Shown here: positions 1 through 34,000 of the stretch, in pieces
How the letters are laid out: each line of letters begins with the position of its first letter
Position numbering within the stretch: position 1 is the first letter of the stretch
Assembly: GCA_035084275.1 (NCBI GenBank)
Contig: JAYJKW010000046.1
Span: 1-64,000 of the forward strand
From: Hydrolagus colliei
Taxonomy: Eukaryota
Length of the DNA stretch: 64,000 bases
Reading direction: 5' to 3'
Position numbers and translations under genes: made by a program
The notes under the pieces: generated by a model
The model's database searches: none
What the model saw: only the letters and a program-made list of their open reading frames with translations
Told to the model about the DNA's origin: nothing

Positions 1-44
1 TGGGGACGTCTGTGTGAGGAGCACAACTGGGGGCGACGGTTGAA
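1..44 (-). CDS. IGHM: Cluster A IgM CH2 exon, 5' part only (truncated by window start)
   Basis: Reads VQPSPPVVLLTQTSP, near-identical to cluster B CH2; TAGTAG acceptor at 45-50. Confidence 0.85.
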
Positions 45-522
45 CTACTACAACAACAAAATTAGATTTGTACAGATAGAGCCTTTCGTGTCTAGTAGAC
101 ATCCCAAGGAGCTGAACAGTTAGGTGGGGGGGAAAGTTAGGAAGGGGGAGAGTTAGGAGGGGAGGAGAGTTAGGAGGGCAGCAGAAGGCACGGTCGAAGA
201 GGAAGGTGTTGATACCGGCCTTGAAGGAGGAAAGGGAGGAAGCGAGTGGGAGGGTTTGCGGGACGGAGTTCCACGGCGTGGGGGGGGGGGGGGCAGAGAG
301 ACACAGAGAGAGGCTGAAAGCCCGGCCACCGATGGTAGGGCAGTTAGTGTCAGTGGAGGTGGAGCAGGCCAGAGACTGCTGAGCGGAGGGGACGGGCGGC
401 CAGATAGGGAGACAGCAGGTCGGAGAGATAAGCGGGGACAAGTCCGTGAATGTCCACACGAGGGCAACGTTGTCGTTGTTGTTGTCTGATCGCCTCTGTA
501 TCTTTGGAAACACAAAACTAAC

Positions 523-845
523 CTGGGAAACAGATGTCCCCGTCTAACCAGATGCTGCTTTTTAGATGCTGCTTTTGACCTGACAACAGAGATTGAAGAT
601 GTCCACCTGAGATGCCTCGATGGTCAGCTGGCTGCTGGCTGTGTAGAACCGGCCTTGCTTAGCACCGGGGGGTAACTCTTGACTTGGCCTTTGTTGGCGA
701 TGGGATGTCCTTTGGAGGTCCAGCTGAAAGTGGCCGGCTCGGGGGAGAAGTCGGCGGCCAGACACCCGAACGTGAGTTGGCCTTCGAGGGGGGGGCGATC
801 CGCAGGTGGGCAAGAGGGCGTAAAGACTGGGAGCTGTAGGGGTGG
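523..845 (-). pseudogene. IGHM: Cluster A IgM CH1 exon, frameshifted as assembled
   Basis: Near-identical to B CH1 (13582-13890) but has a 14-nt duplication (agatgctgcttttt), one A lost and one G gained in homopolymers; AG/GT boundaries intact. Confidence 0.75.
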
Positions 846-960
846 CTGGAAACGCGAAGAGAGCAAAGTTAGACCCCCCCAACCAGGTTTCCGCCTTGTC
901 CAATTGGGTCAGACGCCACAGATACACTGGACTAGACCTGCCACACTCGTAAATACACAC

Positions 961-8464: not shown

Positions 8465-8839
8465 TTGCATTTGATGTGTGTGTGTATGTCTTGTGTGTCT
8501 GCGTGTGTGTCTTGTGTGTGTGTGTGTCTGCATGTCTGTGTGTGTGTCTTGTGTGTGTGTCTGTGTGTGTGTGTGTCTTGTGTGTGTGTGTTTGTATGTC
8601 TGTGTATGTGTCTAACTGTGTGTGTGTGTGGAGTAAGGAAACTTGTCCCGAGGTCTCTCCTTGACCTGACCTGCCTGGATTCGAACCCAGGTCTCTCTCT
8701 CGCGGCTTGTAAGGCGAGCTAGTGCGTTGCTCTAACCCACTGAGCTGCGGAGCTCCCAGTCAGACGTCAAGACACCCACAGAACTCGAGGCTCGAGCAAC
8801 AGGAAAGAGAGGGAGTCAACAGTTCACTGAGTTCTATCG

Positions 8840-8845
8840 TTTATT
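8840..8845 (-). terminator. Membrane-form poly(A) signal, cluster B
   Basis: AATAAA about 210 nt after TM2 stop; equivalents at 22094, 34155 and 62048(+). Confidence 0.65.
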
Positions 8846-9058
8846 GAGAGTTCGAGTCCGACAAGCCGACAGTGTCTGTGGCGACAACAGGGGGGGGGGG
8901 GGGGGTGGGGGGGGGAGAGTAGGAAAGGGGGGGAGAGATAGGAGGGCAGCAGGAGGCACGGTCGATCAACACACACGCATATACATAGACACACATACAC
9001 ATATACACAGACAGACACACACACGCGAGGCTCGTCCGTGAAGCTGAGGTTAAGAGAC

Positions 9059-9067
9059 TCATTTCAC
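9059..9067 (-). CDS. IGHM: Cluster B TM2 exon (VK*)
   Basis: TTTTATTTTCAG|GTG AAA TGA. Confidence 0.9.
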   Translation of the reverse strand: MK

Positions 9068-9398
9068 CTGAAAATAAAAATGAAAGATACGATTAATAAT
9101 TCAGCCTTTATGGGTGTGTGTGTGTGTGTCTGTCTGTCTGTCTATATGTGCATGTGTCTGTCTGTCTATGTGTGTGTGTGTGTGTATGTGGAGTAAGGAA
9201 ACTTGCCCAGATTTCGCCCTGACCTGACCTGCCTGGTTCGAACCACAGGTCTCTCATTCACGCTTGTAAGGCGAGTGAGTTCACTTGTGAATGAGTTCAC
9301 TCACTCACGAGTGGGTGAGTGAGTGAGTGAGTGAGTTCATTCGTTCGTTCGTGAGTCAGTGAGTGAGTTCACTCGTGAGTGAGTTGCCGTCTCCTCAC

Positions 9399-9529
9399 CT
9401 TAATCAGAGTGACGGTGGCGCTGTAGAACATACTCAGGAAGAAGAGGATGATGAAGGTGGAAGCTGTAGGCCAGAGGTTGCCACTTTCATCTGATGAGAA
9501 ACCCTCCAGCGTCACCTCGGCTGAGGAAT
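9399..9529 (-). CDS. IGHM: Cluster B TM1 exon
   Basis: DSSAEVTLEGFSSDESGNLWPTASTFIILFFLSMFYSATVTLIK, IgM transmembrane motif; AG/GT boundaries. Confidence 0.95.
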
Positions 9530-9559
9530 CTGTGCGGATACAACCCGGAGATATATAAT

Positions 9560-10065
9560 AATATTAATATTAATAATAATAATCCTGGCGTTTGATGTCG
9601 CCGCTTCTCGCGTCTCACCGGCCGCGTCTCAAAGCGCTTCGCGGGATAGACTGTCAAGTGTAGTGACTCTGTGGATATCCGTGGGGAGAGCGAAACGCGA
9701 TCGGAAGCCGATTGCGCACGGCAGCATACCGCCCCCCCCCCCCCCACCCCCGCCCCACACACACACACACACAGCCAACAGTGGGTTGAAAATGACCGAT
9801 TTTTATTAAGAAGGGATTATTATTAGGTGTGTATGCGTGTGTGTCTGTGTGAGTGTGTCTGTGTGTGTCTATGTGTGTGTTTGTGGTGACTGTATGTGTG
9901 TGTGGTGACTGTATGTGTGTGTGTGTGTGTGGTAAGGCAACTTGCCCCAAGGTTTCCCCCTGACCTGACCTGCGTGGATTCGAACACAGGTCTCTCTCTC
10001 TCTCTCTCTCACACATTGTAAGAGCGAGCGAGCGAGTGAGTGTCTCTAACCCACTGAGCTACAGG
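9560..10065 (-). mobile_element. tRNA-derived SINE directly upstream of TM1 acceptor
   Basis: TAGCTCAGTGGGTTAGAG head, GTTCGAATCC B-box, tail ends about 30 nt before TM1. Confidence 0.75.
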
Positions 10066-10166
10066 AGCTCCCACACACTGATGTCCCCCCCGTGTGACAG
10101 TGTCCAGAGCTACACACAGTCACTCCTCTCACAATCCTGCGGACTCCACAAAGTCATTACACATGT

Positions 10167-10197
<31 letters not shown>

Positions 10198-10389
10198 GGG
10201 GAGGGGGGGCGGCTGGGGTGGGGGGTGGGGGGGTGATCAGACACTGTCCCTCACAGTCGGGGTGAAGTTTCGTATCTTAGGGAACAATGACCTGGAGTTT
10301 ATTGTCGAAAATCACTTCAGATTCACTTCAAATAAAACGCTGACTTTACTCTGTGTGTGTAACAGCGATGGAGGGAAAGGGGGAGAAGT

Positions 10390-10951
10390 GTGTGTCTGTG
10401 TGTGAGTGTGTGTGTGTGAGCTTGGGTAATGGTGAATGTGAGTGTGTAGGGTAGTGTGGGGGGGGGGGGGGTGGAGCTTCGGTGAATGTGAGTGTGTTTC
10501 GGTGTGTGTGTGGGCTGGGTGTGTGTGAGTATGTGTGTGTTTGTATGATTCAGTGTGTGTGTGAGTATGTGTGTGAGTGTGCATTTGTGAGCTGAATGGT
10601 TATGAATGTGTGCAGGTCTGGGTTATTCTGAGTAGGTGTGAGTGTATGTGTGAGTGTGTGTGTGTGTATGTGAGTGAGTGTGTGTGAGTGTATTAGTGTG
10701 AGTGTGAGTGAGTGTATGAGTGTGAGTGTGAGTGAGTGTATGAGTGGGTGCTGGGTGGCTATGTTTGTGTGTATCTGCGGGACTGGATTATTGTGAGTAG
10801 GTGAGTGTGACTGTGTGTGTGTCAGTGATTGGGTGTGGAACTGGGCTTTTGTGAATAGTTGTGAGTATGTGTGTGAGTGTGAGTGTGTGTGAGTGGGTCT
10901 GGGTTTTTGTCGGAAGATGTGAATGTGTGTGTGTGTGAGCTGGTTAATTAT

Positions 10952-10982
<31 letters not shown>

Positions 10983-10985
10983 CAT
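10390..10985. repeat. Imperfect (TG)n/(TGAG)n tract, CH4-TM1 intron
   Basis: Visible dinucleotide tract; similar tracts at 6820-7330, 19800-20310, 20790-21290, 23700-24300, 36000-37100, 53450-54300, 59360-60430 and 62670-63870. Confidence 0.9.
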
Positions 10986-11174
10986 GTTTCGCTCCCCCAC
11001 GGATATATGTACAGTCACTACACTTTACAGCCTATTCTGTGAAGCGCTTTGAGACACAGTCTAGAAGACGTGAAAAGCCGCGATATCAAACGCCGGGATT
11101 ATTATTATTATTATTACTAATTAAATGAAACCTTCCCCTCTGGGACCTTGACTCGTTACTGACAATAAAGATTT

Positions 11175-11180
11175 TTTATT
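11175..11180 (-). terminator. Secretory-form poly(A) signal, cluster B
   Basis: AATAAA about 200 nt after tailpiece stop; equivalents at 24495, 37342, 53222(+) and 59170(+). Confidence 0.7.
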
Positions 11181-11375
11181 GGATTTACTTTCTTTCCATG
11201 ACTTCAAATTGGACAAGGTACTGGCAGGGTAGGGTAGGGTTGAGAAGAGTAGGGTAGGGGAGGGTAGGATAGGGCAGGGTAGGTACGGGAGGGGAGGGGA
11301 GGGGAGAGTAGGGGAGGGGAGGAGAGGGGAAGGTGCAACAAAAGGAAGAGCGAAATTGGTAAGGCGAGTTGGGAC

Positions 11376-11770
11376 TCATTGACAAGTCTTGACTGTGTCC
11401 ACCAGGACGAGGGAAACGTTTACGAAAGTGGGTTTACCGCTGGTCTTGTTGACGTATCTGGTCAGGGTCTTGGACGAGTTGAAGGATCGGTGCCCCACCA
11501 CACAGGAGTAGGTGTTCCCTTTGTCCCAGTCTCCGGCCGAGACGGACAACATACTGTACATGGAGTAGTTGTGACTTGTGTTGGCTGCCATGGCCTCGGT
11601 GTTGGTGTATTGACTGGCATCGATCGCCTGGTCGTTGACTGCCCACTCCACGAAGATCTCTTTGGGAGCGAATTCCTTCACCAGGCATGTGAGGGTGACC
11701 CACTGATGGGCGGACAGTTCTTCAGGCGACGGGAGTAGGAGATACACTGAAGGCCTATTGGTGTCCTGGT
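11376..11770 (-). CDS. IGHM: Cluster B CH4 plus secretory tailpiece (type 1)
   Basis: PSVYLLLPS..VTLTCLVKEFAP..YSCVVGH..SGKPTFVNVSLVLVDTVKTCQ*; internal G|GTAAA donor at 11437 for TM splicing. Confidence 0.96.
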
Positions 11771-12035
11771 CTGTTGGAAGGAATACAGTCCATATCATCA
11801 ACGACAACAGGAACAGGAACATGAACTTGACACTTGTACAGACAGAGCCTTTCACGTCATGGATGTAGGGTGGAGGCGAGGTTGTGGAGGGCTTTGGGGG
11901 TGTGGGAGGCTGGAGGGAAGGGAAGGGAGGGGATTAGGAGTTGGAGGCGTAGGCGTAGGACTTCCATCGATTGAGAATGTGGGGGGGTGGGGGCACTGAA
12001 TGGCCGAAGGCTCGCTCTTCTGCCAATGGTGGGAC

Positions 12036-12250
12036 GGGTTGGGTTGGGTTGAGTTGAGTTGGATTGAGTTGAGTTGAGTTGGGTTGGGTTGGGTTGGATT
12101 GGGTTGGGTTGGGTTGAGTTGCATTGGGTTGCGTTGAGTTGGGTTGAGTTGGGTTGAGTTGGGATGAGTTGGGTTGGGTTGGGTTGGGTAGGGTTGAGGT
12201 GGGTTGGATTGAGTTGAGTTGAGTTGGGATGAGTTGGGATGAGTTGGGGT
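12036..12250 (+). repeat. (GGGTT/GAGTT)n pentamer array in CH3-CH4 intron
   Basis: Visible; second copy at about 25334-25530; absent from D/E/F. Confidence 0.9.
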
Positions 12251-12369
12251 GGGTGGGTGTTGAGCAGAGGGAGGGAGGGGAAGGGAGGGGCAGGTTGGTA
12301 AAGGTGGGGGGAGATAGGAGCTCAGTTGCAATAAGCCAAATAACTCATTTCTTGTGCTGAATCTCTCAC

Positions 12370-12663
12370 CTGGCTTCTTAGATATCGTTCCTCTCTTGGG
12401 CGTCAACATATCGACATGGTTGGCGACGCATTCAAACTCTTTGCCTCCATTCCATTCGCGTGTGGAGACGTTTAATTCACTGGTCACTCGCTGAGCAGAT
12501 CGACTCTCTCGTGCTGACTGTCGAGCCATGTGTCCTTGAGTCCAAGTCACGTTGACCCCGCTGGGAGCGTCGGTCACGACGCAGGTCAGTGTGACCGTGT
12601 CTCCCAACAACACCTGCTTCGGTGAAGGCGGCAGGAAAGAGACCTTGACCTCGCCCAGACATT
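12370..12663 (-). CDS. IGHM: Cluster B CH3 exon (type 1)
   Basis: ECLGEVKV..VTLTCVV..VNVTW..EFECVANH..ISKKP; 294 nt, phase 1/1. Confidence 0.95.
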
Positions 12664-12779
12664 CTAGACCGAGGGGAGAAGAAAAACAAAGATGACCACA
12701 ACAAAAAGACAAGCATGAGAGAGTGTGTGTGTGAGAGCGAGATCTCTGACCACTGAGCTACAGGAGACCCCAACCCTAC

Positions 12780-13097
12780 CTGGGTTCCAATTGGTGATGT
12801 TCTTGATGATGAGGGTCTGGGAAGGGTCATGGGTGACTCTGCAGGAATAAACCACGTCCCACCTCCAGTCTTTGGCCGGGATGGTCAGTCGGCTGTCAGT
12901 ACTGAAGTTCCCATTGTCTTTCAGCGAAGGGGAGGTCTCAATGCCTGAGGTTACGGCCTTCCCGTCCTTCAGCCAGTCAACGATGAGCTTGTCCGGTCTG
13001 AAGCCAGAGACTGAGCAGAGAAGGGTGGCCTGGTTGATGAGGGCGATGTCTTCGGGGGACGTCTGTGTGAGGAGCACAACTGGGGGCGACGGTTGAA
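12780..13097 (-). CDS. IGHM: Cluster B CH2 exon
   Basis: ATLLCSVSGFRP..VDWLKDGK..YSCRVTH; 318 nt. Confidence 0.95.
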
Positions 13098-13581
13098 CTA
13101 CTACAACAACAAAATTAGATTTGTACAGATAGAGCCTTTCGTGTCTAGTAGACATCCCAAGGAGCTGAACAGTTAGGTGGGGGGGAAAGTTAGGAAGGGG
13201 GGAGAGTTAGGAGGGGAGGAGAGTTAGGAGGGCAGCAGAAGGCACGGTCGAAGAGGAAGGTGTTGATACCGGCCTTGAAGGAGGAAAGGGAGGAAGCGAG
13301 TGGGAGGGTTTGCGGGACGGAGTTCCACGGCGTGGGGGGGGGGGGGGGGGGGCAGAGAGACACAGAGAGAGGCTGAAAGCCCGGCCACCGATGGTAGGGC
13401 AGTTAGTGTCAGTGGAGGTGGAGCAGGCCAGAGACTGCTGAGCGGAGGGGACGGGCGGGCAGATAGGGAGACAGCAGGTCGGAGAGATAAGCGGGGACAA
13501 GTCAGTGAATGTCCACACGAGGGCAACGTTGTCGTTGTTGTTGTCTGATCGCCTCTGTATCTTTGGAAACACAAAACTAAC

Positions 13582-13890
13582 CTGGGAAACAGATGTCCCC
13601 GTCTAACCAGATGCTGCTTTTGACCTGACAACAGAGATTGAAGATGTCCACCTGAGATGCCTCGATGGTCAGCTGGCTGCTGGCTGTGTAGAAACCGGCC
13701 TTGCTTAGCACCGGGGGGTAACTCTTGACTTGGCCTTTGTTGGCGATGGGATGTCCTTTGGAGGTCCAGCTGAAAGTGGCCGGCTCGGGGGAGAAGTCGG
13801 CGGCCAGACACCCGAACGTGAGTCGGCCTTCGAGGGGGGGCGATCCGCAGGTGGGCAAGAGGGCGTAAAGACTGGGAGCTGTAGGGGTGG
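13582..13890 (-). CDS. IGHM: Cluster B CH1 exon
   Basis: ATPTAPSLYALLPTC..FGCLAADFSP..TFSW..YTASSQLTI..LCCQV; 309 nt; shark IgM CH1-like. Confidence 0.95.
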
Positions 13891-14007
13891 CTGGAAACGC
13901 GAAGAGAGCAAAGTTAGACCCCCCCAACCAGGTTTCCGCCCTTGTCCAATTGGGTCAGACGCCACAGATACAGTGGACTAGACCTGCCACACTCGTAAAT
14001 ACACACA

Positions 14008-18524: not shown

Positions 18525-18898
18525 GGCTTCCCAGACAAAGTATCAGAGTTTGACGCCCTGTTTGTTTGAGCCACAACAGCCGAGAGACAGACAGCTGTCT
18601 GGTGGACAGATGGGGTCTGTTACACACTGAGCTGCTATTTAACGACGGGGGACGAGGCCAGGTGTCTAGGCAACAGACCAATCAGGTATCAGGACTGATT
18701 GGGGAGGGGGGGGAGTGGAGGGACGGGGGAGAAGGTTGGGGGTGGGGAGGGTCACACCTCACATTCCCTCTGACCCCCGCACTGATCATTAATTTACCTT
18801 CTGCCTGGACGGCAGCAAATTTCATATTAATTAATACGAGTGTCAATAGTGGGAGCTTTCTGTGGCTCGGTGGTTAGAGCACTCGCTCACTCACTCAC

Positions 18899-18945
<47 letters not shown>

Positions 18946-20372: not shown

Positions 20373-20404
<32 letters not shown>

Positions 20405-22388
20405 GGGGGTGGGGGGGGTGTAACGCTGCCATGCGCAATCGGCTGCCGCGTTTCTCTCTCCCACAAATATATCCATGTACACACAGTCACTACACTTGAC
20501 GGTCTATCCCGCGAAGCGCTTCGAAACGCCGTCGAGGAGACGCGAAAACAAAACGCCGCTGTATCCAATGCCGGGTTCAGTGATTATTAACATTAATGTG
20601 ATTATTAGATTTCTATATTATTCGGGGGATTATTGTTTCTCTCTGGGCCTCGTCACCGATTCGAGAGACTCGCGAGTGGACGGGAGACCATTAGGGGGTG
20701 GCTGGCGGGGAGCAGGGGGTTCGAGCGGCGGGCACGGCTTGTCATAGGATACAGCTGGGATTGACCCCACCCCACCCCCCCCCCACCAATACGTGTGTGC
20801 GTATTTGTGTGTTTGTGTGAGTGTGTGGAGTTTGCGTGTGACTGTGTGTGTTGAGTGTGTGAGTGTGTGTGTGTGAGTGTGTGGAGTTTTGTGTGATTGT
20901 GTGTTGAGTGTGTGAGTGTGTATGTGGAGTGTGTGAGTGTGTATGTGGAGTGTGTGAGTGTGTATGTGGAGTGTGTGTGTGTGAGTATGTGTGGAGTGTG
21001 TGTGTGCGTATTTGTGTGTGCGTGTAGTTTGTGTTTGAGTGTGTGAGTGTGTGTGTGAGTGAGTGTGTATGAGCGTGTGTGTGTGTGGAGGTTGTTTGTG
21101 AGTGTGTGTTGAGTTTGTGTGCGTATTTGTGTGTGTGTGTATTTGTGTGTATTTGTGTGAGTGTGTGTGTGTGTGTGCGAGCGTGTGTGTGCTGGCGCGT
21201 GAGTGTATGTGTCTGTGTGAGTGAATGTGAATACGTGTGGGTGTGTGTGCGTGTGTGTGAGTGTGTGTGTGTGCGTGTGTGTGTTGAAAGCTTGAGCTGT
21301 TTGGTGGAGTATTTTTAACCAGTCTCCAGTGGTCGGCTTTCAGGTCAGGTCAGTATTAAGAGGCAGAGACTCTAATTCAGTGGCAGAGTGAGCAGGTGTT
21401 TCCTGTGGATAAGGAACTGAGCCCTTCTCACGTCATCAGATTTGAGTCCCCAGACACATACACACAGTCACTACACTCGACGGTCTATCCTGTGAAGCGC
21501 TTCGAGACACGGTCGATAAGACGTCAGAAGCCGCGATATCCAACACGCCAGGATTATTATTATTTATAATTATTATTATGTCTCTACCGTTTAGAACTCG
21601 CGAAAAAATTAAGTTAATTAGTTAAATTGAATTAAATCCTTGCATTTGATGTGTGTCTGTGTGTGTTTCTTGTGCGCGTGTGTGTCTGCATGTCTGTGTG
21701 TGTGTTTGTGTGTGTGTGTCTTCACGCTTGTAAGGCGAGTGAGTGAGCGAGCGAGTTCACTCGTGAGTCAGTGAGTTCACAAGTGAGTGAGTGAGTTCAC
21801 TCGTCAGTGAGTTCACTTGTGAATGAGTTCACTCACTCACTCGTGTGTATGTCTGTGTGTGTGTCTAACTGTGTGTGTGTGTGGAGTAAGGAAACTTGTC
21901 CCGATGTCTCTCCCTGACCTGACCTGCCTGGATTCGAACCCAGGTCTCTCTCTCGCGGCTTGTAAGGCGAGCTAGTGCGTTGCTCTAACCCACTGAGCTG
22001 CGGGAGCTCCCAGTCAGACGTCAAGACACCCACAGAACTCGAGGCTCGAGCAACAGGAAAGAGAGGGAGTCAACAGTTCACTGAGTTCTATCGTTTATTG
22101 AGAGTTCGAGTCCGACAAGCCGACAGTGTCTGTGGCGACAACAACGACAATAGCAACACAACCACACTGGTACAGAGCCTCTCACGTCAGGGGGACGTGA
22201 GGGGGGGGGGGGGGGGGAGAGTAGGAAAGGGGGGGAGAGATAGGAGGGCAGCAGGAGGCACGGTCGATCAACACACACGCATATACATAGACACACATAC
22301 ACATATACACAGACAGACACACACACACACATATACACAGACACACACACACACGCGAGGCTCGTCCGTGAAGCTGAGGTTAAGAGAC

Positions 22389-22397
22389 TCATTTCAC
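22389..22397 (-). CDS. IGHM: Cluster C TM2 exon (VK*)
   Basis: TTTTCCAG|GTGAAATGA. Confidence 0.9.
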   Translation of the reverse strand: MK

Positions 22398-22738
22398 CTG
22401 GAAAATAAAATGAAAGATACGATTAATAATTTCAGCCTTTATGGGTGTGTGTGTGTGTGTCTGTCTGTCTGTCTATATGTGCATGTGTCTGTCTGTCTAT
22501 GTGTGTGTGTGTGTGTATGTGGAGTAAGGAAACTTGCCCAGATTTCGCCCTGACCTGACCTGCCTGGGTTCGAACCACAGGTCTCTCATTCACGCTTGTA
22601 AGGCGAGTGAGTTCACTTGTGAATGAGTTCACTCACTCACTCACTCACGAGTGGGTGAGTGAGTGAGTGAGTGAGTTCATTCGTTCGTTCGTGAGTCAGT
22701 GAGTGAGTTCACTCGTGAGTGAGTTGCCGTCTCCTCAC

Positions 22739-22869
22739 CTTAATCAGAGTGACGGTGGCGCTGTAGAACATACTCAGGAAGAAGAGGATGATGAAGGTGG
22801 AAGCTGTAGGCCAGAGGTTGCCACTTTCATCTGATGAAAAACCCTCCAGCGTCATCTCGGCTGAGGAAT
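22739..22869 (-). CDS. IGHM: Cluster C TM1 exon
   Basis: 131 nt, as B but with V to M. Confidence 0.95.
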
Positions 22870-24672
22870 CTGTGCGGATACAACCCGGAGATATATAATA
22901 ATATTAATATTAATAACAATAATCCTGGCGTTTGATGTCGCCGCTTCTCGCGTCTCACAGGCCGCGTCTCAAAGCGCTTCGCGGGATAGACTGTCAAGTG
23001 TAGTGACTCTGTGGATATCCGTGGGGGGAGCGAAACGCGATCGGAAGCCGATTGCGCACCGCAGCATACACCCCCCCACCCCCCCACACACACACACACA
23101 GCCAACATTGGGTTGAAAATGACCGATTTTTATTAACAAGGGATTATTATTAGATGTGTGTGCGTGTGTGTCTGTGTGAGTGTGTCTGTGTGTGTCTATG
23201 TGTGTGTCTGTGGTGACTGTATGTGTCTTTGGTGACTGTATGTGTGTGTGTGTGTGGTAAGGCAACATGCCCCAAGGTTTCCCCCTGACCTGACCTGCGT
23301 GGATTCGAACACAGGTCTCTCTCTCTCTCTCTCTCTCTCACACATTGTAAGAGCGAGCGAGCGACTGAGTGTCTCTAACCCACTGAGCTACAGGAGCTCC
23401 CACACACTGATGTCCCCCCCGTGTGACAGTGTCCAGAGCTACACACAGTCACTCCTCTCACAATCTTGCGGACTCCACAAAGTCATTACACATGTGTGTG
23501 TGTGTGTGTGTGGGGGGAGGGGGGGCGGCTGGGGTGGGGGGTGGGGGGGTGATCAGACACTGTCCCTCACAGTCGGGGTGAAGTTTCGTATCTTAGGGAA
23601 CAATGACCTGGAGTTTATTGTCGAAAATCACTTCAGATTCACTTCAAATAAAACGCTGACTTTACTCTGTGTGTGTAACAGCGATGGAGGGAAAGGGGGA
23701 GAAGTGTGTGTCTGTGTGTGAGTGTGTGTGTGAGTGTGAGTGTGTGTGTGTGTGAGCTTGGGTAACGGTGAATGTGAGTGTGTAGGGCAGTGTGGGGGGG
23801 GTGGAGCTTCGGTGAATGTGAGTGTGTTTCGGTGTGTGTGTGGGCTGGGTGTGTGTGTGTGTGTGTGTTTGTATGATTCAGTGTGTGTGTGAGTATGTGT
23901 GTGAGTGTGCATTTGTGAGCTGAATGGTTATGAATGTGTGCAGGTCTGGGTTATTCTGAGTAGGTGTGAGTGTATGTGTGAGTGTGTGTGTGTATGTGTG
24001 TGAGTGTGTGTGAGTCTATGAGTGTGAGTGTGAGTGAGTGTATGAGTGTGAGTGTGAGTGAGTGTATGAGTGGGTGCTGGGTGGCTATGTTTGTGTGTAT
24101 CTGCGGGACTGGGTTATTGTGAGTAGGTGAGTGTGACTGTGTGTGTGTCAGTGATTGGGTGTGGAACTGGGCTTTTGTGAATAGTTGTGAGTATGTGTGT
24201 GAGTGTGAGTGTGTGTGAGTGGGTCTGGGTTTTTGTAGGAAGATGTGAATTTGTGTGTGTGTGAGCTGGTTAATTATGTGTGTGTGTGTGTGTGTGTGTG
24301 TGCATGTTTCGCTCCCCCACGGATATATGTACAGTCACTACACTTTACAGCCTATTCTGTGAAGCGCTTTGAGACACAGTCTAGAAGACGTGAAAAGCCG
24401 CGATATCAAACGCCGGGATTATTATTATTATTATTACTAATTGAATGAAACCTTCCCCTCTGGGACCTTGACTCGTTACTGACAATAAAGATTTTTTATT
24501 GGATTTACTTTCTTTCCATGACTTCAAATTGGACAAGGTACTGGCAGGGTAGGGTAGGGTAGAGAAGAGTAGGGTAGGGGAGGGTAGGATAGGGCAGGGT
24601 AGGTACGGGAGGGGAGGGGAGGGTAGAGTAGGGGAGGGGAGGAGAGGGGAAGGTGCAACAAAAGGTTGGGAC

Positions 24673-25067
24673 TCATTGACAAGTCTTGACTGTGTCCACC
24701 AGGACGAGGGAAACGTTTACGAAAGTGGGTTTACCGCTGGTCTTGTTGACGTATCTGGTCAGGGTCTTGGACGAGTTGAAGGATCGGTGCCCCACCACAC
24801 AGGAGTAGGTGTTCCCTTTGTCCCAGTCTCCGGCCGAGACGGACAACATACTGTACATGGAGTAGTTGTGACTTGTGTTGGCTGCCATGGCCTCGGTGTT
24901 GGTGTATTGACTGGCATCGATCGACTGGTCGTTGACTGCCCACTCCACGAAGATCTCTTTGGGAGCGAATTCCTTCACCAGGCATGTGAGGGTGACCAAC
25001 TGATGGGCGGACAGTTCTTCAGGCGACGGGAGTAGGAGATACACTGAAGGCCTATTGGTGTCCTGGT
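24673..25067 (-). CDS. IGHM: Cluster C CH4 plus secretory tail (type 1)
   Basis: Near-identical to B; ends TVKTCQ*. Confidence 0.96.
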
Positions 25068-25652
25068 CTGTGGGAAGGAATACAGTCCATATCATCAACG
25101 ACAACAGGAACAGGAACATGAACTTGACACTTGTACAGACAGAGCCTTTCACGTCATGGATGTAGGGTGGAGGCGAGGTTGTGGAGGGCTTTGGGGGTGT
25201 GGGAGGCTGGAGGGAAGGGAAGGGAGGGGATTAGGAGTTGGAGGCGTAGGCGTAGGACTTCCATGGATTGAGAATGTTGGGGGGGTGGGGGCACTGAATG
25301 GCCGAAGGCTCGCCCTTCTGCCAATGGTGGGACGGGTTGGGTTGGGTTGAGTTGAGTTGGATTGAGTTGAGTTGGGTTGGGTTGGATTGGGTTGGGTTGG
25401 GTTGAGTTGCATTGGGTTGCGTTGAGTTGAGTTGGGTTGAGTTGGGTTGAGTTGGGATGAGTTGGGTTGGGTTGGGTTGGGTAGGGTTGAGGTGGGTTGG
25501 ATTGAGTTGAGTTGAGTTGGGATGAGTTGGGGTGGGTGGGTGTTGAGCAGAGGGAGGGAGGGGAAGGGAGGGGCAGGTTGGTAAAGGTGGGGGGAGATGG
25601 GAGCTCAGTTGCAATAAGCCAAATAACTCATTTCTTGTGCTGAATCTCTCAC

Positions 25653-25946
25653 CTGGCTTCTTAGATATCGTTCCTCTCTTGGGCGTCAACATATCGACAT
25701 GGTTGGCGACGCATTCAAACTCTTTGCCTCCATTCCATTCGCGTGTGGAGACGTTTAATTCACTGGTCACTCGCTGAGCAGATCGACTCTCTCGTGCTGA
25801 CTGTCGAGCCATGTGTCCTTGAGTCCAAGTCACGTTGACCCCGCTGGGAGCGTCGGTCACGACGCAGGTCAGTGTGACCGTGTCTCCCAACAACACCTGC
25901 TTCGGTGAAGGTGGCAGGAAAGAGACCTTGACCTCGCCCAGACATT
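25653..25946 (-). CDS. IGHM: Cluster C CH3 (type 1)
   Basis: Same protein as B CH3; 294 nt. Confidence 0.95.
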
Positions 25947-26062
25947 CTAGACCGAGGGGAGAAGAAAAACAAAGATGACCACAACAAAAAGACAAGCATG
26001 AGAGAGTGTGTGTGTGAGAGCGAGATCTCTGACCACTGAGCTACAGGAGACCCCAACCCTAC

Positions 26063-26380
26063 CTGGGTTCCAATTGGTGATGTTCTTGATGATGAGGGTC
26101 TGGGAAGGGTCATGGGTGACTCTGCAGGAATAAACCACGTCCCACCTCCAGTCTTTGGCCGGGATGGTCAGTCGGCTGTCAGTACTGAAGTTCCCATTGT
26201 CTTTCAGCGAAGGGGAGGTCTCAATGCCGAAGGTTACGGCCTTCCCGTCCTTCAGCCAGTCAACGATGAGCTTGTCCGGTCTGAAGCCAGAGACTGAGCA
26301 GAGAAGGGTGGCCTGGTTGATGAGGGCGATGTCTTCGGGGGACGTCTGTGTGAGGAGCACAACTGGGGGCGACGGTTGAA
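26063..26380 (-). CDS. IGHM: Cluster C CH2
   Basis: As B but with S to F; 318 nt. Confidence 0.95.
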
Positions 26381-26873
26381 CTACTACAAGAACAAAATTA
26401 GATTTGTACAGATAGAGCCTTTCGTGTCTAGTAGACATCCCAAGGAGCTGAACAGTTAGGTGGGGGGGAAAGTTAGGAAGGGGGGAGAGTTAGGAGGGGA
26501 GGAGAGTTAGGAGGGCAGCAAAAGGCACGGTCGAAGAGGAAGGTATTGATACCGGCCTTGAAGGAGGAAAGGGAGGAAGCGAGTGGGAGGGTTTGCGGGA
26601 CGGAGTTTCACGGCGTGCGGGGGTGGGGTGGGGGGGGGGGGTGGCAGAGAGACACAGAGAGAGGCTGAAAGCCCGGCCACCGATGGTAGGGCGGTTAGTG
26701 TCAGTGGAGGTGGAGCAGGCCAGAGACTGCTGAGCGGAGGGGACGGGCGGGCAGATAGGGAGACAGCAGGTCGGAGAGATAAGCGGGGACAAGTCCGTGA
26801 ATGTCCACACGAGGGCAACGTTGTCGTTGTTGTTGTCTGATCGCCTCTGTATCTTTGGAAACACAAAACTAAC

Positions 26874-27182
26874 CTGGGAAACAGATGTCCCCGTCTGACC
26901 AGATGCTGCTTTTGACCTGACAACAGAGATTGAAGATGTCCACCTGAGATGCCTCGATGGTCAGCTGGCTGCTGGCTGTGTAGAAACCGTCCTTGCTTAG
27001 CACCGGGGGGTAACTCTTGACTTGGCCTTTGTTGGCGATGGGATGTCCTTTGGAGGTCCAGCTGAAAGTGGCCGGCTCGGGGGAGAAGTCGGCGGCCAGA
27101 CACCCGAACGTGAGTTGGCCTTCGAGGGGGGGCGATCCGCAGGTGGGCAAGAGGGCGTAAAGACTGGGAGCTGTAGGGGTGG
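26874..27182 (-). CDS. IGHM: Cluster C CH1
   Basis: 309 nt, open, B-like. Confidence 0.95.
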
Positions 27183-27299
27183 CTGGAAACGCGAAGAGAG
27201 CAAAGTTAGACCCCCCCAACCAGGTTTCCGCCCTTGTCCAATTGGGTCAGACGCCACAGATACACTGGACGAGACCTGCCACACGCGTCAATACACACA

Positions 27300-27690
27300 C
27301 TGGATTAGGCCATTCAGCCCCTTGAGCCTGCCCCGCCATTCAATAAGATCACGGCTGATCTTCTAATCTAACTCCCCCGACCCCCCTCCTTGTCCTGATC
27401 AACCCTTAATCACTTTATCCTCAAGAAATCTCATCAATCTCAGTCTTGAATATGTCCAGGGACTGACTGAGCATCTACAGGCCTTTGGGGTAGAGAATTC
27501 CATCCATTCACTATCCTCTTGAGTGAAGATGTTTTTCCTCAACTCAGTGTGAAAAGGCTGACCCCTCATCTTCAGACTGTGACCCTCTAGTTATGGTTTC
27601 TCCAACCAGGGGAGACAGTCTCCCACTGTCTACTGTGTCAATGCCCCTTAATAATCTGATAGGTTTCTATAAGATCACCTCTGATTCGTC
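27300..27690 (-). mobile_element. CR1 LINE 3' fragment (C)
   Basis: Orthologous intron copy. Confidence 0.72.
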
Positions 27691-29485
27691 AAACCAGGTC
27701 TCACACTCAATCACAGCCTGAACCCTGACATCTGAAACGCAAACTGTTTCCGTCCAATAACCCACAGGTTACTCAACACTCTTCTTCTCTAAGCCAGACG
27801 CTCTCTCTCCCTGTGTCCGTTTCTCTCGCTCACACTCTGTCCTTTCACGTCACAACACGGAGCCTTCAAACTGCGTTTCGCCCACAAACGTACAGTCACT
27901 ACACTTGACAGTCTATTCTGTGAAGCGCTTTGAGACACAGTCGATCGGATGTGAAAAGCCGCCACGTCTAACGCAAGGATTGTTCTCATTACTAACACCT
28001 GGATCTCTATATACAGAGTTTACGCTGTGTGTTCGATTGAAATCAGATCTGTGTGTGTTTTCTCCGCCGATCAGTTGGTGTGAAACAGGAACCAGATGAT
28101 TGTAGAGCAGCAACCGCCTCCAGTGTCTACTGTGCGCTGTGAGGAAGCCTCACTCAATTGCCGTGTAAATCAAATTGAAATGAAATTCTGAGCTCCTGAA
28201 GCTCAGTGGTTAGAGACACCCACTCGCCTCGCAATCGCGAGACCTGTGTTCGAATCCAGGCAGATCAGGTCAGGGCGAGACGTGGGGCCACGTTTGCTTG
28301 TTCCACACACACACACACAGACACACACACAAACACATATATACACACACACACAGACACCTATATTCATCCCTCCAAAAGAAACCACAATAAGAAAAAT
28401 TGTGATTTTCAATCCACAGCTGTGTGTGGGGGACGCTGCTGTGCGCAATTGGCTGCCGTGTTTCGCTCCCCCACAAATATAAAGTCACTACACTTGACAG
28501 TCTATTCTGTGAAGCGCTTTGAGACACAGTCGATAAGATGTGAAAATTATTATATTATTGTAATATCCGAGCAGTTTTAGTGACTGTATTTTCAATGACA
28601 TCCCAGCAGTGTAAACCCACTTTACTCTCAGTCTCCCCCCCACCATCCCAGTCTCCTCTCCTCTATCCCGGACGAGCCTCTTTCCTTCCTATTAAACAAC
28701 CAATTGAAATTCAGATTGGAACCGATCAGACAGCCTGCCACTCGCTCATCCCATAACATTCAGGCCCGGATTCCTAACACGCGGCAAAAGTTTCAAGCGT
28801 ATTTATACAATTCCCGACCCCATCGTACCCCCACAATCAGCAGCCGGCATCACCACGATCTGGCATCGCAGGAAGTCTGTCAGTGTGACTTCAGCTGTGC
28901 AGTCACGAACCACCGAAAATATACAAGCAATAATACTGATAATATAATTATAATGAAATAATTCATATAAATGTTAAATGTAACATGTAACATGTGACAT
29001 GTGACATGTAAAATTTTAAATTCTAAATTCTAAATTTTAAATTTGTAATGGAAAATGGAAAATGGAAAATACAAAATTAAACATTAAAAATTAAAAATTT
29101 CCATTTTTTAAATTTAAAATTCTTTTGTTTAAGTTTTAAATGCTGCATGCTACATGTTAAACGTTAAACTTCCAATTTTAAACTTTAAACTTTAAATTGT
29201 GAACATTAAATATCAAACATTAAATAATAATCATTGCATTTGACTTCGCGCTTTTCACATTTTATCAACGTCTCAAAAGCTCTGCACAGAATACACTGAA
29301 TAGACTATATATTTTGTGGGAGAGCCGAACACGGCAGCCAATTGCGCACAGCAGCTTCCCCACAAATAGCCGTGCATTGAAAATAACCAATTTTATTTCA
29401 GTGGGATTTTTTTTTTGGTACGGATTATTATTGAATGAGTGAGTGAGCGCGTTCTTTCTTTCCCTCGTTCGCAATTGTTCCTTAC

Positions 29486-29533
29486 CGTCAGTCACTGTCA
29501 GCATGGTCCCTTGTCCCCAGTAGTCAATATAGT
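29486..29533 (-). CDS. IGHJ: Cluster C JH (YIDYWGQGTMLTVTD), 23-RSS at 29534-29572
   Basis: WGQG motif; nonamer variant GCAATAACT. Confidence 0.94.
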
Positions 29534-29916
29534 CACAGTGCCTCAGTGTGTGGTCTGCTCACTGCAATAACTTGCTGTGAGGACAGGTCACACAAACAAT
29601 CTGTTATTCCAAATGGAAAATTCCCCCCAAAACAAAACGCAGGGAACCGTCTCTCTCTGTTGTTAAACGCCTGTGTCTTGCTGTGTTCCCGACAACAAAA
29701 CAGCTCCCATTGCGATTGTCGCCCATGGATTTGAGATTCAAAATACGACGTTTCATGTGTTTTTAAGTCAAATCGGCTGATAATTCCTCAGTGGTGGGTC
29801 TCCTCATACACACGTGAACTCTCCGAGCGTTAGTTGGGACCCTCACAAGCCGGCGGTGGGAGAGATTGAGAAGGTTTTGCTGATGGAGGGTTTTTGTATT
29901 GACAGTTAACGCTGTG

Positions 29917-29930
29917 ACCGTAGTTGTATA
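29917..29930 (-). other. Cluster C germline-fused D1D2 segment TATACAACTACGGT, 12/12 RSS
   Basis: D1-type 5' RSS (heptamer CATAGTG) and D2-type 3' RSS flank one 14-nt core; D1-D2 interval absent. Confidence 0.88.
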
Positions 29931-30511
29931 CATAGTGATACAGTCCCATACAAATACTGGCCTCGGTCTCTGCTCTCTCTACACTGGCTGCCAAAAGTCA
30001 CTGAAATGGGCTATTTTATTGCAGGACAGATTCTCAGATAATAATAATAATAATAATAATTCTTCTATTTGATATCGTGACTTTTCACGTCTTCCAGACT
30101 GTGTCTCAAAGCGTTTCACAGGAAATACTGGGTGGGGGGGGGGGGGGAGGGGTGGGGAACGCAATCCAACCTCAGTCCTGAAGAACCACACAGTCACTTA
30201 CCGGCTGAAATGGCGGGATATCGCAGCACAGGCAGGCAGCTCTTTCACTCACTTCCCTCCTCACTGCCCTCCTCACTTCCCTCCTCACTACCCTCCATCG
30301 AACCGCCGGTCACTGTCTCGGTTTGGGGAATGAGACGAGGAATCCATTCCAATTCGAAGCCCGTGTTTTCCCCCCCGTTCTTCCTATCTGTGCTGCAGAC
30401 ACAGTGTTGACACCATGAATCGACTTCCCCCCAGTCAGTCAGTCGAGGGTGGGACCTCTCTTCGCTTGTGTGATTATTTGTAGGAGGCCAGCCCAGGTTC
30501 CTCTCACTGTG

Positions 30512-30817
30512 AGTCTCTGGCACAGTAATATATGGCGGTGTCGTGAACTGTCTGACAGTTGATGGTCAGATCGCAAATGTTGTTGGAATTCTCTTTGGTG
30601 ACAGTGACACGGCTTTCAATGCCGGGCGCGTAATATTGGTAGCTTGAGCTATGATAGGCAAGGAGCCATTCCCAGCCTTTCCCAGGAACCTGCCTGACCC
30701 AGTGCATGTAGTAGCTGCTGAGGTCGAACCCGCTGGTTCTGCAGGTGAGTCTCACGGCCGTGCCAGGATTCCCGGTAAGAGTGGCCGGCTGTGTCAGTAC
30801 CACAGCGCCCTGGACGC
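30512..30817 (-). CDS. IGHV: Cluster C VH exon, open; 23-RSS at 30473-30511
   Basis: ..[52 protein letters not shown]. Confidence 0.95.
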
Positions 30818-31077: not shown

Positions 31078-34000
31078 GGCTTCCCAGACAAATTATCAGA
31101 GTTTGACGCCCTGTTTGTTTGAGCCACAACGGCCGAGAGACAGAGAGCTGTCGGGTGGACAGATGGGGTCTGTTGCACACTGAGCTGCTATTTAGCGAGG
31201 GGGGACGAGGCCAGGTGTCTGGGGAACGGACCAATGATGTATTAGGGCTGATTGGGGAGGAAGGGGAGGGAGGGAGGGGGTGGGGGTGGGTCAGGGAGTG
31301 AGGGGGGGCAGTGAAGGAGGCGGGGGGTGGGGGGGAGAGTCACACCTCACATTCCCTCTGACCCCCGCACTGATCGTTAATTTACCTTCTACCTGGACGG
31401 CAGCAAAGTTCATATTAATTAATACGAGTGTCAATAGTGGGAGCTTTCCGTGGCTCGGTGGTTAGAGCAGTCGCTCACTCACTCACTCGCTCTCTCTCTC
31501 TCTTGCTCTCTCTCTCTCTCTTGCTCTCTCTCTCGCTCGCTTGCCTTGCAAGCATGAGAGATCTGTGTGTTTCAAATCCAGGCAGATCAGGTCACGTCAG
31601 GGCGAAAGCTTGGGCAAGTTTCCTTACTCCACACACAAACACACACACAGACACACACACATGCCTAATAATAATGCCTCCAAAAACAAACCCACTGCAA
31701 TAAAAATAAAACAATAAAAATCAGTCATTTTCAACCCTATATATGTTTTGTGGGGAGAGCGTTTCGCTCTCCCCACAAAACATATATACAGTCTCTACAC
31801 TTGACAGTCTATTCTGTGAAGCGCTTTGAGACGTGGATAAGAGGTGATGAGCCGCGATATCAAACGCGAGGATTATTATTATGATTATTATTACAAACAT
31901 ATACTCAAACATGTATACACTATACACACAAATAAACACATACACACAGACACACTCACACACACGTCCACACACACACAGCCGCGTGTGTCCCCCTCAC
32001 AAAACCACTCCGGCTTTGATCGAACGTGAAGCGAAATTAAGCGGATTTAATTCAATTTAACTAATTTAACTTAATTTTTTAGCGCGGTTTAAACGGTAGA
32101 GACAATATATCCATGTACACACAGTCACTACACTTGACGGTCTATCCCGCGAAGCGCTTCGAGACGCCGTCGACGAGACGCGAAAACAAAACGCCGCCGT
32201 ATCCAATGCCGGGATCGGTGATTATTAACATTAATGTGATTATTAGATTTCTATATTATTCGGGGGATTATTGTTTCTCTCTGGGCCTCGTCACCGATTC
32301 GAGAGACTCGCGAGTGGACGGGAGACCATCAGGGGGTGGCTGGCGGGGAGCAGGGGGTTCGAGCGGCGGCCGCGGCTTGTCACAAGACGCAGCTGGGATT
32401 GAGCCCCCCCACCCCCCCTCCGCCTCCCCCCCACCACCGCTCCCCCCCACCACCGCACCCCCCCACCAATACGTGTGTGCGTATTTGCGTGTGTGTGTGT
32501 GTGTTGAGTGTGTGAGTGTATGTGGAGTGTGTCTTGATTGTGTGTGGAGTGTGTCTGTGCGTATGTTTGTGTTTGGGTGAGTGTGTGTGTGTGTGTTGAA
32601 AGTTTGAGCTGTTTGTTGGAGTATTTTTAACCAGTCTCCAGTGGTCGGCTTTCAGGTCAGGTCAGTATTAAGAGGCAGAGACTCTAATTCAGTGGCAGAG
32701 AGAGCAGGTGTTTCCTGTGGATAAGGAACTGAGCCCTTCTCACATCATCAGATTTGGGTCCCCAGACACATACACACAGTCACTACACTCGACGGTGTAT
32801 CCTGTGAAGCGCTTCGAGACACGGTCGATAAGACGTGAGAAGCCGCGATATCCAAACGCCAGGATTATTATTATTATTTATTATTATTATGACTCTACCG
32901 TTGAAAACTCGCGAAAAAATTAAGTTAAATTAGTTAAATTGAATTAAATCCTTGCATTTGATGTCTGTGTGTGTGTCTCTCTGTGTGTGTGTTATATGTG
33001 TGTGCGTCTGTGTCTTGTGTGTCTGTGTCTTGTGTGTGTGTGTCCTGTGTGTCTGTGTGTGCGTGTGTCTGTGTGTTTCTTGTGTGTCACACCGTGTCCG
33101 AGGTGCCAGGGCCATCACAGAGTCCCCGGGTTCATCAACTGAGGAGCCGGTTGGTTTTGGGGCCTGACACCACACTGGGCCCTTTTTCCGCGCCCTTTTT
33201 TTCCCGCCATCTCAGGGATCGTCCGGGCGGGCGGCGAGGACAGGGAATGGTTGCTGGACGATTGTTGGACGATTGTTGGTTATTGTTTGTTGCTGTTTTT
33301 GTTGCTAACATTATTGCTTTTGTTGTTTATTATTGTTTATTATTGTTGTTTGATTCCCCCCACCCCTGACCCCATCTTCTTCCCTCACTCCCTTTCCCCA
33401 CTTTCTCTCCTCCCTTTTCCCCTTCCCTCCCTCTTCCTGATCTTGCCCCCTCCCATCTTTCCCTCTCTTCCTTGCCCCCCTTTCTCCCCCCTCTTCCTCC
33501 CTAACCCTAACCCATCCCACCTTTCCCTCCCTCTCCCCCCTTACCCTCTTTTCCCCCTTCCTCCCCTGGCTCAATTTTCGCGATTGTTTGTGGGGACACT
33601 GCTGTGCGCAATTTGGCTGCCGCGTTTCGCCCACAAATATACAGTCGATTTTCCTGCCTTTCTTCCCCCTGCCTCGACCCCTCCCCTTTTGCTTCTTTAC
33701 CCCCTTTTGCCCCTAGTCCCACTTCCGTGACTGATTGTGGGACACTGCTGTGCGCAATTTGGCTGCCGCGTTTCGCCCACTAATATACAGTTACTTTTCC
33801 TACTATGCTTTATCCTGCCCTGATCCTCCCCCCACTGCTCTTGTCCTACCTGACTGTACAGCGCCTTTGGATGTCCTCTCGACGTGACAGGCACTATATA
33901 AATGTAAGTTTTGTTTGTTGTTTGTTTGTGTCTGTGTGTGTGTGGAGTAAGGAAACTTGTCCCGAGGTCTCTCCCTGACCTGACCTGCCTGGATTCGAAC

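What the first reader, a model, noticed from the sequence alone, without database searches (positions are those of the whole stretch)
27183..27300. Cluster C is a chimera with a breakpoint just upstream of CH1 (switch-like exchange in the germline)
Seen: C's CH1-TM block is nearly identical to B. From about 100 nt upstream of the CH1 acceptor, diagnostic variants match E instead: CACACGCGTCAATAC versus A/B CACACTCGTAAATAC; CTCATCAATCTCAG versus CTCACCAATCTCGG; TTTACTCTCAG..CTATCCCGG; TTTGACTTCGCGC; D2 end ACTACGGT; V FR3 ENSNNIC. D carries an A/B-like D2 on a type 2 constant region. Inference: VDJ and C modules were reassorted through the J-CH1 intron, the interval where somatic inter-cluster switching has been reported in nurse shark.
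Basis: partly seen in the sequence, partly recalled or inferred. Interest (0 to 1): 0.7.

Follow-up and report, generated by a model that had tools for sequence, protein, structure and literature searches.

The report
Antibody gene cluster with homogenised constant region
One of six neighbouring chimaera (ratfish-type) IgM antibody gene clusters switches abruptly, about 30-90 bases before its first constant exon, from about 4-5% to about 1% divergence from its two neighbours. This is an ordinary footprint of gene conversion or unequal crossing-over between tandem copies, not a splice of an "E-type" variable half onto a "B-type" constant half.

Summary
The change point is real. Cluster C (minus strand) differs from both A and B at 68 of 1665 sites (4.1%) in the J-CH1 intron, but at only 8 of 917 (0.9%) from there through CH1 into CH2. 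The B-C block stays about 99% identical for 5.4 kb (21899-27269). The most likely break lies at 27270/27271 (support interval 27209-27285), 26-102 nt upstream of the CH1 acceptor at 27183 (MaxChi p 0.0005-0.0025).

The "E-like" reading does not hold.
- Upstream of the break C is still closer to B than to E (58 versus 34 sites).
- The unrooted tree is the same on both sides (AB | C | DEF).
- C as sister of E is rejected (AU p=0.013).
- No C-E conversion fragment is detectable.

The junction is colinear, with no indel and no switch-like repeats, so it was made by homology.

Best reading: concerted evolution of the type 1 constant block among A, B and C, with its 5' edge just before CH1. A-B and E-F also change divergence within about 100 nt of this spot. 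This is an ordinary mechanism in a new locus.

The parts
27209..27285 (-). Support interval of the divergence change point. The most likely break is 27270/27271, which is 87-88 nt 5' of the CH1 acceptor at 27183.
   Evidence: Two-rate likelihood; MaxChi C-A at 27270/27271 and C-B at 27264/27265; AIC scan best at 27225.
21899..27269 (-). Constant-region block of cluster C (CH1 to TM and 3' flank), about 99% identical to cluster B at 8646-13977. It is also about 99% identical to A where A is in the window (A 1-931).
   Evidence: Pairwise window profiles; multiple alignment.
26869..27183 (-). CH1 exon of cluster C (C1-set domain).
   Evidence: ORF and tblastn; Pfam C1-set E=1.3e-10.
27270..29485 (-). 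The older part of the J-CH1 intron of cluster C. C differs from A or B by 5.0-5.1% (pairwise) and from both at 4.1% of sites. It carries many substitutions private to C and ancestral states shared with D, E and F.
   Evidence: Site patterns; J donor located at 29485/29486.
29486..29533 (-). JH segment of cluster C (WGQGT motif), with its RSS heptamer at 29534-29540.
29917..29936 (-). Germline-fused D1-D2 of cluster C. Its D2 3' end, CTACGG, is shared only with E.
   Evidence: Alignment; motif search.
30513..30809 (-). VH exon of cluster C (V-set). It is a mosaic: the FR3 motif is shared with E and CDR1 is identical to D.
21650..21890 (.). (TG)n and (GTGA)n microsatellite region where the B-C near-identity appears to end on the 3' side of the gene.
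   Evidence: Tandem Repeats Finder; alignment A1; window profiles.
8646..13977 (-). Constant-region block of cluster B, the counterpart of the C block. B position 13977 corresponds to C position 27269.
1..931 (-). Part of cluster A's constant region (CH1 and the CH1-CH2 intron). It is 99.5% identical to B, and A position 931 corresponds to C position 27269. A single-base gap inside CH1 breaks the frame.

Best explanation
The window holds six chimaera-type IgM heavy-chain clusters. A, B, C and D lie on the minus strand and E and F on the plus strand. A, B and C repeat about every 13 kb and share a 'type 1' constant region.

Cluster C's VDJ region and almost all of its 2.3-kb J-CH1 intron belong to an older lineage that is the sister of A and B, about 4-5% diverged from them. 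The block from about 30-90 nt upstream of CH1, through CH1-CH4 and the TM exon, to the microsatellite just 3' of the gene (about 5.4 kb) was made nearly identical (about 1%) to the same block of A and B much more recently. The cause was homologous exchange between misaligned tandem clusters in the germline: interlocus gene conversion or unequal crossing-over, that is, concerted evolution of the constant-region module.

Shown here: the abrupt, significant step in divergence; its position; the in-register junction; the absence of any specific affinity to E.

Inferred: the mechanism (homology-directed repair or meiotic exchange), and that the constant block was overwritten. The direction of the exchange is not determined. 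The same pattern arises if C's VDJ-plus-intron part was imported from a cluster outside the window.
For: - Step in divergence at 27264-27271. C-A falls from 5.9% to 1.1% and C-B from 5.2% to 1.2% (p = 0.001-0.002).
- The Cμ introns are as similar as the exons (98.5-99.75% per 400 nt), so selection on exons is not the cause.
- D, E and F show no such drop in their constant regions: they differ by 8-12% there against 4-7% in the intron. An intrinsically low mutation rate in Cμ is therefore unlikely.
- The order ((A,B),C) holds on both sides of the break, with very different depths.
- C has no indel at the junction.
- The A-C identical run 27265..26996 is significant in a GENECONV-like permutation (p = 0.0005).
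- Near-identity appears to end near a (TG)n/(GTGA)n microsatellite at about 21.65-21.89 kb.
- Mosaicism is pervasive elsewhere in the array. A-B are 99.75% identical upstream of V, 93.5-94% across V and 99.5% in Cμ. All quartet splits occur inside the V region.
Against: - There is no change of tree topology, so the recombination inference rests on depth alone (branch lengths), with only six sequences.
- The donor and the direction of exchange are unknown.
- Beyond the 3' microsatellite, B-up versus A-up identity is alignment-dependent: 90-96% over the first 400-430 nt depending on the alignment and about 97% on my reading of alignment A1. A single unequal crossover followed by further events is therefore not excluded.
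Confidence: 0.68

Rival explanations
1. Cluster C is a B x E (type 1 x type 2 lineage) chimera, made when a VDJ module of E type was joined to a B-type constant region by a germline, switch-like break-and-join in the J-CH1 intron.
For: - The motifs shared by C and E are real.
- The D2 3' end CTACGG (three adjacent bases) and the FR3 motif ENSNNIC are shared only by C and E.
- C-E identity is 98.5% in 28499-28694.
- The break does lie in the J-CH1 intron.
Against: - Where D or F can be scored, the 'E' states are also D and F states: 7 AB|CDEF sites and 0 CE-specific sites in 27270-27800.
- Upstream C equals B at 58 sites and E at 34, and the proportion is the same with D or F as the second parent.
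- C+E as sisters is rejected (AU p = 0.013).
- No significant C-E fragment was found (p = 0.14-0.28).
- Five ABC|DEF sites persist upstream of the break.
- C's V protein is closest to D.
- The junction is colinear with no indel and the intron has no switch-type repeats.
Confidence: 0.06
2. Same boundary, opposite direction. A, B and C were recent whole-unit duplicates, and C's upstream region, VDJ and most of its J-CH1 intron were later overwritten by conversion from a diverged IgM cluster that is not in this window.
For: - There are 12 substitutions private to C in 531 nt just upstream of the break, against 1 in 401 nt just downstream (Fisher p = 0.009).
- More clusters exist next to and outside this window (earlier notes).
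- Far upstream (32105-32500) C returns to 96-97% identity with A and B.
Against: - A-B themselves are more diverged in the intron (2.3-2.9%) than in Cμ (0.3-0.6%). This is more simply explained by homogenisation of Cμ in all three clusters.
- No donor sequence is available to test.
Confidence: 0.16
3. No exchange at all. The constant-region block simply accumulates substitutions about five times more slowly than the J-CH1 intron, through constraint or repair.
For: The ratio of A-B to C-AB divergence is similar on both sides of the break (about 0.4-0.5), as a pure rate scaling would give.
Against: - D, E and F are more diverged in CH1 and in the CH1-CH2 intron than in the J-CH1 intron.
- The Cμ introns and microsatellite-rich spacers are as similar as the exons.
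- The step is abrupt. Upstream of 27271 C differs from both A and B about every 25 nt; downstream the next such site is 281 nt away, at 26990.
Confidence: 0.04
4. Assembly artefact: a misjoin, or over-polishing of near-identical tandem copies.
For: - The array is a 13-kb tandem repeat with 99% identical blocks.
- Cluster A carries single-base gaps that break V and CH1, which could be consensus errors.
- Reads could not be examined.
Against: - There is no N run between 16038 and 38999.
- C's constant block keeps its own private variants, including a 9-nt insertion at 26624-26632, so it was assembled as a distinct copy.
- A misjoin inside an identical block cannot create a sharp edge of identity.
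Confidence: 0.06

Closest known systems
Concerted evolution of tandem multigene families by interlocus gene conversion or unequal crossing-over. The textbook case is the human fetal globin genes, where a (TG)n tract lies at the conversion boundary (recalled from memory, not checked here).
   Same: - Abrupt edge of near-identity between paralogues.
- In-register homologous junction.
- One edge apparently at a (TG)n-type microsatellite.
- Mosaic relationships along the repeat unit.
   Different: Here the homogenised unit is a whole 5.4-kb immunoglobulin constant-region gene block. Its 5' edge separates it from the rearranging VDJ module.
Somatic inter-cluster 'switching' in nurse shark B cells. 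A VDJ of one cluster is expressed with the C region of another, and the process is thought to be AID-driven (review PMC4279169). That the junctions lie in the J-C intron is my recollection of Zhu et al. 2012, which is not held in the library.
   Same: The exchange boundary lies in the J-CH1 intron, so a VDJ module and a C module end up with different histories.
   Different: - This one is germline, not somatic.
- The junction is perfectly homologous and the intron length is unchanged.
- No second parental cluster can be identified.
- There is no evidence for AID or end joining.
Cartilaginous-fish IgM cluster families, including germline-joined clusters made by RAG activity in germ cells (Lee et al. 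2000, PMC2193156) and the ratfish IgM gene types described in 1998 (the latter from earlier scan notes and memory).
   Same: - VH-D1-D2-JH-Cμ1-4-TM cluster organisation.
- Partial germline joins in C (D1D2), D (DDJ) and E (VDD).
   Different: The feature studied here is a homologous exchange boundary, not a RAG join.

Membership tests
Cartilaginous-fish IgM heavy-chain cluster | VH exon (V-set) followed by a heptamer RSS. | tested here: met
   Pfam V-set E = 3.9e-14. CACAGTG follows ...YYCARD.
Cartilaginous-fish IgM heavy-chain cluster | D segment(s) and a JH with the WGxG motif, an RSS and a splice donor. | tested here: met
   Fused D1D2. J at 29486-29533 with its heptamer at 29534-29540.
Cartilaginous-fish IgM heavy-chain cluster | Four C1-set constant exons, a secretory tail and a TM exon. 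| tested here: met
   Four C1-set hits. Tail ...GKPTFVNVSLVLVDTVKTCQ. TM-like hydrophobic exon near 22.8 kb.
Interlocus gene conversion / unequal crossing-over tract | Significant, abrupt change of paralogue divergence along the sequence. | tested here: met
   MaxChi p = 0.0005-0.0025. 2dlnL = 25.7. GENECONV-like p = 0.0005 for A-C.
Interlocus gene conversion / unequal crossing-over tract | Homologous, in-register junction. | tested here: met
   C has no gap between 27100 and 27500 in the six-cluster alignment.
Interlocus gene conversion / unequal crossing-over tract | A second boundary that delimits a tract (conversion) rather than open-ended identity (single crossover). | tested here: inconclusive
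   Identity falls from about 99% at the microsatellite (21.65-21.89 kb). Beyond it the value is 90-97% depending on the alignment. That region is A-upstream versus B-upstream, which are themselves recent duplicates.
Interlocus gene conversion / unequal crossing-over tract | Phylogenetic incongruence between the segments. | tested here: not met
   The unrooted topology AB|C|DEF is the same on both sides of the break; only the branch lengths differ.
Shark-type inter-cluster switch recombination | Junction inside the J-C intron. | tested here: met
   The break lies at 27209-27285, within the intron 27184-29485.
Shark-type inter-cluster switch recombination | VDJ from one identifiable cluster joined to the C region of another. 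| tested here: not met
   The upstream part is not E-, D- or F-derived. It remains nearest to A and B.
Shark-type inter-cluster switch recombination | Non-homologous or microhomology join that changes the intron length. | tested here: not met
   The junction is colinear and the intron has no S-like repeats.
Shark-type inter-cluster switch recombination | Somatic, AID-associated event in B cells. | not testable with these tools

The most novel reading that the evidence does not exclude
The last 100-200 nt of the J-CH1 intron may be a recurrent germline exchange boundary in this array. Three independent pairs change divergence there: C versus A/B at 27264-27271, A versus B at about 27378, and E versus F at about 27196, the last in the opposite direction. 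If so, VDJ-plus-intron modules and Cμ modules are homogenised separately and can be reassorted. That would be a germline counterpart of somatic inter-cluster switching, helped by the 13-kb spacing of the clusters and by dispersed repeat copies shared by the introns and the spacers.
Probability: 0.2. Interest if true: 0.6.

Novelty: new member of a known kind. Interest (0 to 1): 0.3.

Why it matters
The finding shows, at base-pair resolution, that the constant-region module and the rearranging VDJ module of tightly packed chimaera IgM clusters do not share one history. This bears on how cluster-type antibody loci keep or lose V-C pairing. It also removes the more exciting claim, a germline 'class switch' between two isotypic cluster types, which the sequence does not support. 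The possible recurrence of boundaries just 5' of CH1 is the only part worth a specialist's follow-up.

Tried and rejected
- **E-specific affinity of C upstream of the break.** I tested site patterns, triplets, AU tests and a GENECONV-like run test. All were negative. Only the D2 end and two FR3 residues are CE-specific.
- **Topology change.** None was found.
- **Switch-region-like repeats in the intron.** None was found.
- **Pure rate effect and exon constraint.** Rejected, because the Cμ introns are equally similar and D, E and F behave the opposite way.
- **One-step unequal crossover with B as the recombinant.** Not favoured. In the 930 nt of Cμ available for all three clusters, A and B are sisters: C differs from both A and B at 8 sites, and at two of them (26897, 26390) A and B share a derived base against C, D, E and F. 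About one site groups B with C.
- **Literature.** Lee et al. 2008 (PMC2590587) and Zhu et al. 2012 are not held. Searches for ratfish IgH cluster papers, and for gene conversion between shark IgM clusters, gave only reviews.
- **Conserved 3' element.** ARAGORN and Rfam found nothing there.
- **Other clusters.** IgM clusters outside the window could not be fetched with these tools.

Full report
**Layout.** Self-comparison of the window, ORFs, tblastn with cluster C's exons and Pfam show six IgM heavy-chain clusters.
- A (1 to about 7984, cut by the window edge inside its constant region), B (about 8.6-21 kb), C (about 21.9-32.5 kb) and D (about 34.8-44.5 kb) lie on the minus strand.
- E (about 45.3-54.8 kb) and F (about 55.0-61.6 kb) lie on the plus strand.
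- A, B and C repeat every 13.05-13.3 kb and share one constant-region type. D, E and F share another. Between the types, CH1 is 74-80% identical in protein, CH2 about 81%, and CH3 and CH4 54-59%.
- Cluster C has:
  - a V exon at 30513-30809;
  - a germline-fused D1D2;
  - JH at 29486-29533;
  - a 2302-nt J-CH1 intron (27184-29485);
  - CH1 at 26869-27183;
  - CH2, CH3 and CH4 with a secretory tail;
  - a TM exon near 22.8 kb.
- Earlier notes of this scan call the genome a ratfish or chimaera. I did not verify the species.

- A MAFFT alignment of the six clusters shows C at 98-100% identity to A and B from CH2 through CH1 up to about 27290, and 93-97% upstream. A-B stay at 97-99.5% in the intron.
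- B and C remain about 99% identical over the whole constant gene, 21899-27269 against 8646-13977, introns included.
- MaxChi with permutation puts the change point at 27270/27271 for C-A and 27264/27265 for C-B. Divergence is 5.0-5.9% upstream against 1.1-1.2% downstream, with p = 0.0005-0.0025.
- Counting sites where C differs from both A and B gives 68 of 1665 upstream and 8 of 917 downstream. The likelihood break is 27270/27271, with support interval 27209-27285 and 2dlnL = 25.7.
- A GARD-like two-partition AIC scan is best at 27225, with dAIC 64. Part of that gain may reflect exon/intron heterogeneity.

**Is the upstream half E-like?** No.
- In 27270-27800, where all six clusters align, the splits are AB|CDEF 7, ABC|DEF 5, C-private 12 and CE-specific 0.
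F also carries both motifs and D the second. A and B share a derived base there, and C keeps the state common to all the others.
- The remaining intron motifs lie where D and F have no sequence. There a four-sequence split AB|CE cannot separate 'C is E-like' from 'A and B share a change'.
- Triplet counts upstream of the break are C=B 58 against C=E 34, C=B 27 against C=D 18, and C=B 19 against C=F 13. The share is the same whichever type 2 cluster is used, and C is always nearer to B.
- Maximum-likelihood trees have the same unrooted topology, AB | C | (D,E,F), on both sides. Only the lengths change: the A/B-to-C path is 0.005 in CH1 and 0.046 in the intron.
- Making C the sister of E, of F, or of E+F is rejected in 27270-27800 (AU p = 0.013, 0.009 and 0.013).
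- A GENECONV-like permutation finds no C-E fragment (p = 0.14-0.28). It does recover the A-C run 27265..26996 (p = 0.0005).
- Genuinely CE-specific states are few. They are three adjacent bases at the D2 3' end (CTACGG against CTGGAG in A, B and D) and two FR3 residues (ENSNNIC).
- C's CDR1 is identical to D's, and C's V protein is closest to D: 82%, against 79% for B and 77% for E.
- Inside V all possible splits occur, so V is reticulate in every cluster.

**What it most likely is.**
- The branching order ((A,B),C) is the same in Cμ and in the intron, but Cμ is about five times shallower.
- Exon constraint cannot explain this, because the Cμ introns are just as similar.
- A low local mutation rate cannot explain it either. 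D, E and F are more diverged in CH1 and the CH1-CH2 intron (8-12%) than in the J-CH1 intron (4-7%).
- The junction is colinear: C has no indel between 27100 and 27500. The intron has no switch-type repeats.
- On the 3' side, near-identity appears to end at a (TG)n/(GTGA)n microsatellite at about 21.65-21.89 kb. How far identity falls beyond it depends on the alignment, 90-97%.
- The simplest reading is homology-driven exchange between misaligned tandem clusters. Interlocus gene conversion or unequal crossing-over has homogenised the type 1 constant block of A, B and C, with its 5' edge just before CH1.
- The direction is not determined. Import of C's VDJ and intron from a cluster outside the window gives the same pattern.
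- A-B also drop from 2.9% to 0.5% at about 27378 (p = 0.02), which favours homogenisation of Cμ in all three clusters. E-F change from 4.0% to 9.6% at about 27196 (p = 0.0055).
- Three pairs with a boundary within about 100 nt of the same place is suggestive of a recurrent module boundary. With six sequences it is only a lead.

**Artefact?**
- No N run lies between 16038 and 38999.
- C's constant block has private variants of its own, including a 9-nt insertion at 26624-26632.
- A misjoin inside an identical block would not make a sharp edge.

**Comparison with known systems.**
- The feature here shares only its location in the J-C intron. It is germline, homologous, and has no identifiable second parent.
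- It therefore works like concerted evolution of a tandem gene family, not like a switch join.
- I found no paper in the held library describing germline chimeric IgM clusters in chimaeras. The two most relevant papers are not held.

**Verdict.** The specific B x E, switch-like interpretation is not. The mechanism is ordinary, and this is a new example of it in an interesting locus.

Noticed in passing
window 8623-8836, 21890-22150, 33933-34263, 55031-55330, 62019-62357: A tRNA-like or SINE-like element (it contains GGTTCGAATCC on the gene strand) sits just 3' of every cluster. It is almost invariant among B, C, D, E and F, with about 8 variable columns in about 214. The adjacent constant exons, by contrast, are only 77-88% identical between the two types. 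ARAGORN and Rfam give no hit. It may be a constrained boundary or regulatory element, or a very recently homogenised one.
   Followed up: partly
window 55300-55760 (5' end of cluster F): Cluster F has no V, D or J. Its homology to the other clusters starts inside the J-CH1 intron. The junction falls within a dispersed repeat that occurs both in the inter-cluster spacer and in the J-CH1 intron (C about 27880-27970). F carries spacer-type bases at its 5' side and intron-type sequence at its 3' side. This looks like a repeat-to-repeat homologous deletion of the whole VDJ part.
   Followed up: partly
window 565-846 and 4931-5203 (cluster A): Cluster A has a single-base gap inside CH1 and a frame shift in FR2 of its V exon. 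It is either a pseudogene or carries consensus errors.
   Followed up: no
window 4633-7466 versus 17708-20449: A and B are 99.75% identical upstream of V and 99.5% in Cμ, but only 93.5-94% across the V exon, leader and promoter. This is a second mosaic patch, suggesting conversion from other clusters or selection on V.
   Followed up: partly
window 26457-26827 versus 39663-40029 and 50603-51000: Type 1 and type 2 clusters are 90-96% identical from V through CH1. They lose alignable similarity about 40-50 nt into the CH1-CH2 intron. Identity then resumes at about 88% in CH2 and about 77% in CH3 and CH4. This graded mosaic suggests that the 5' half of all the clusters is homogenised across the two constant-region types.
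   Followed up: partly
window 29917-29925, 47418-47433, 4040-4050, 17140-17150, 41614-41621: There are two D2 3'-end variants, CTACGG (C and E) and CTGGAG (A, B and D). Their distribution is discordant with the constant-region type. Both carriers of CTACGG are germline-joined at D2.
   Followed up: partly
window 27297-27700 and the equivalent positions in all six clusters: A roughly 400-nt interspersed-repeat-like insert occupies the proximal J-CH1 intron of every cluster, so it predates their duplication. The break interval in C ends just 3' of it, on the gene strand.
   Followed up: no
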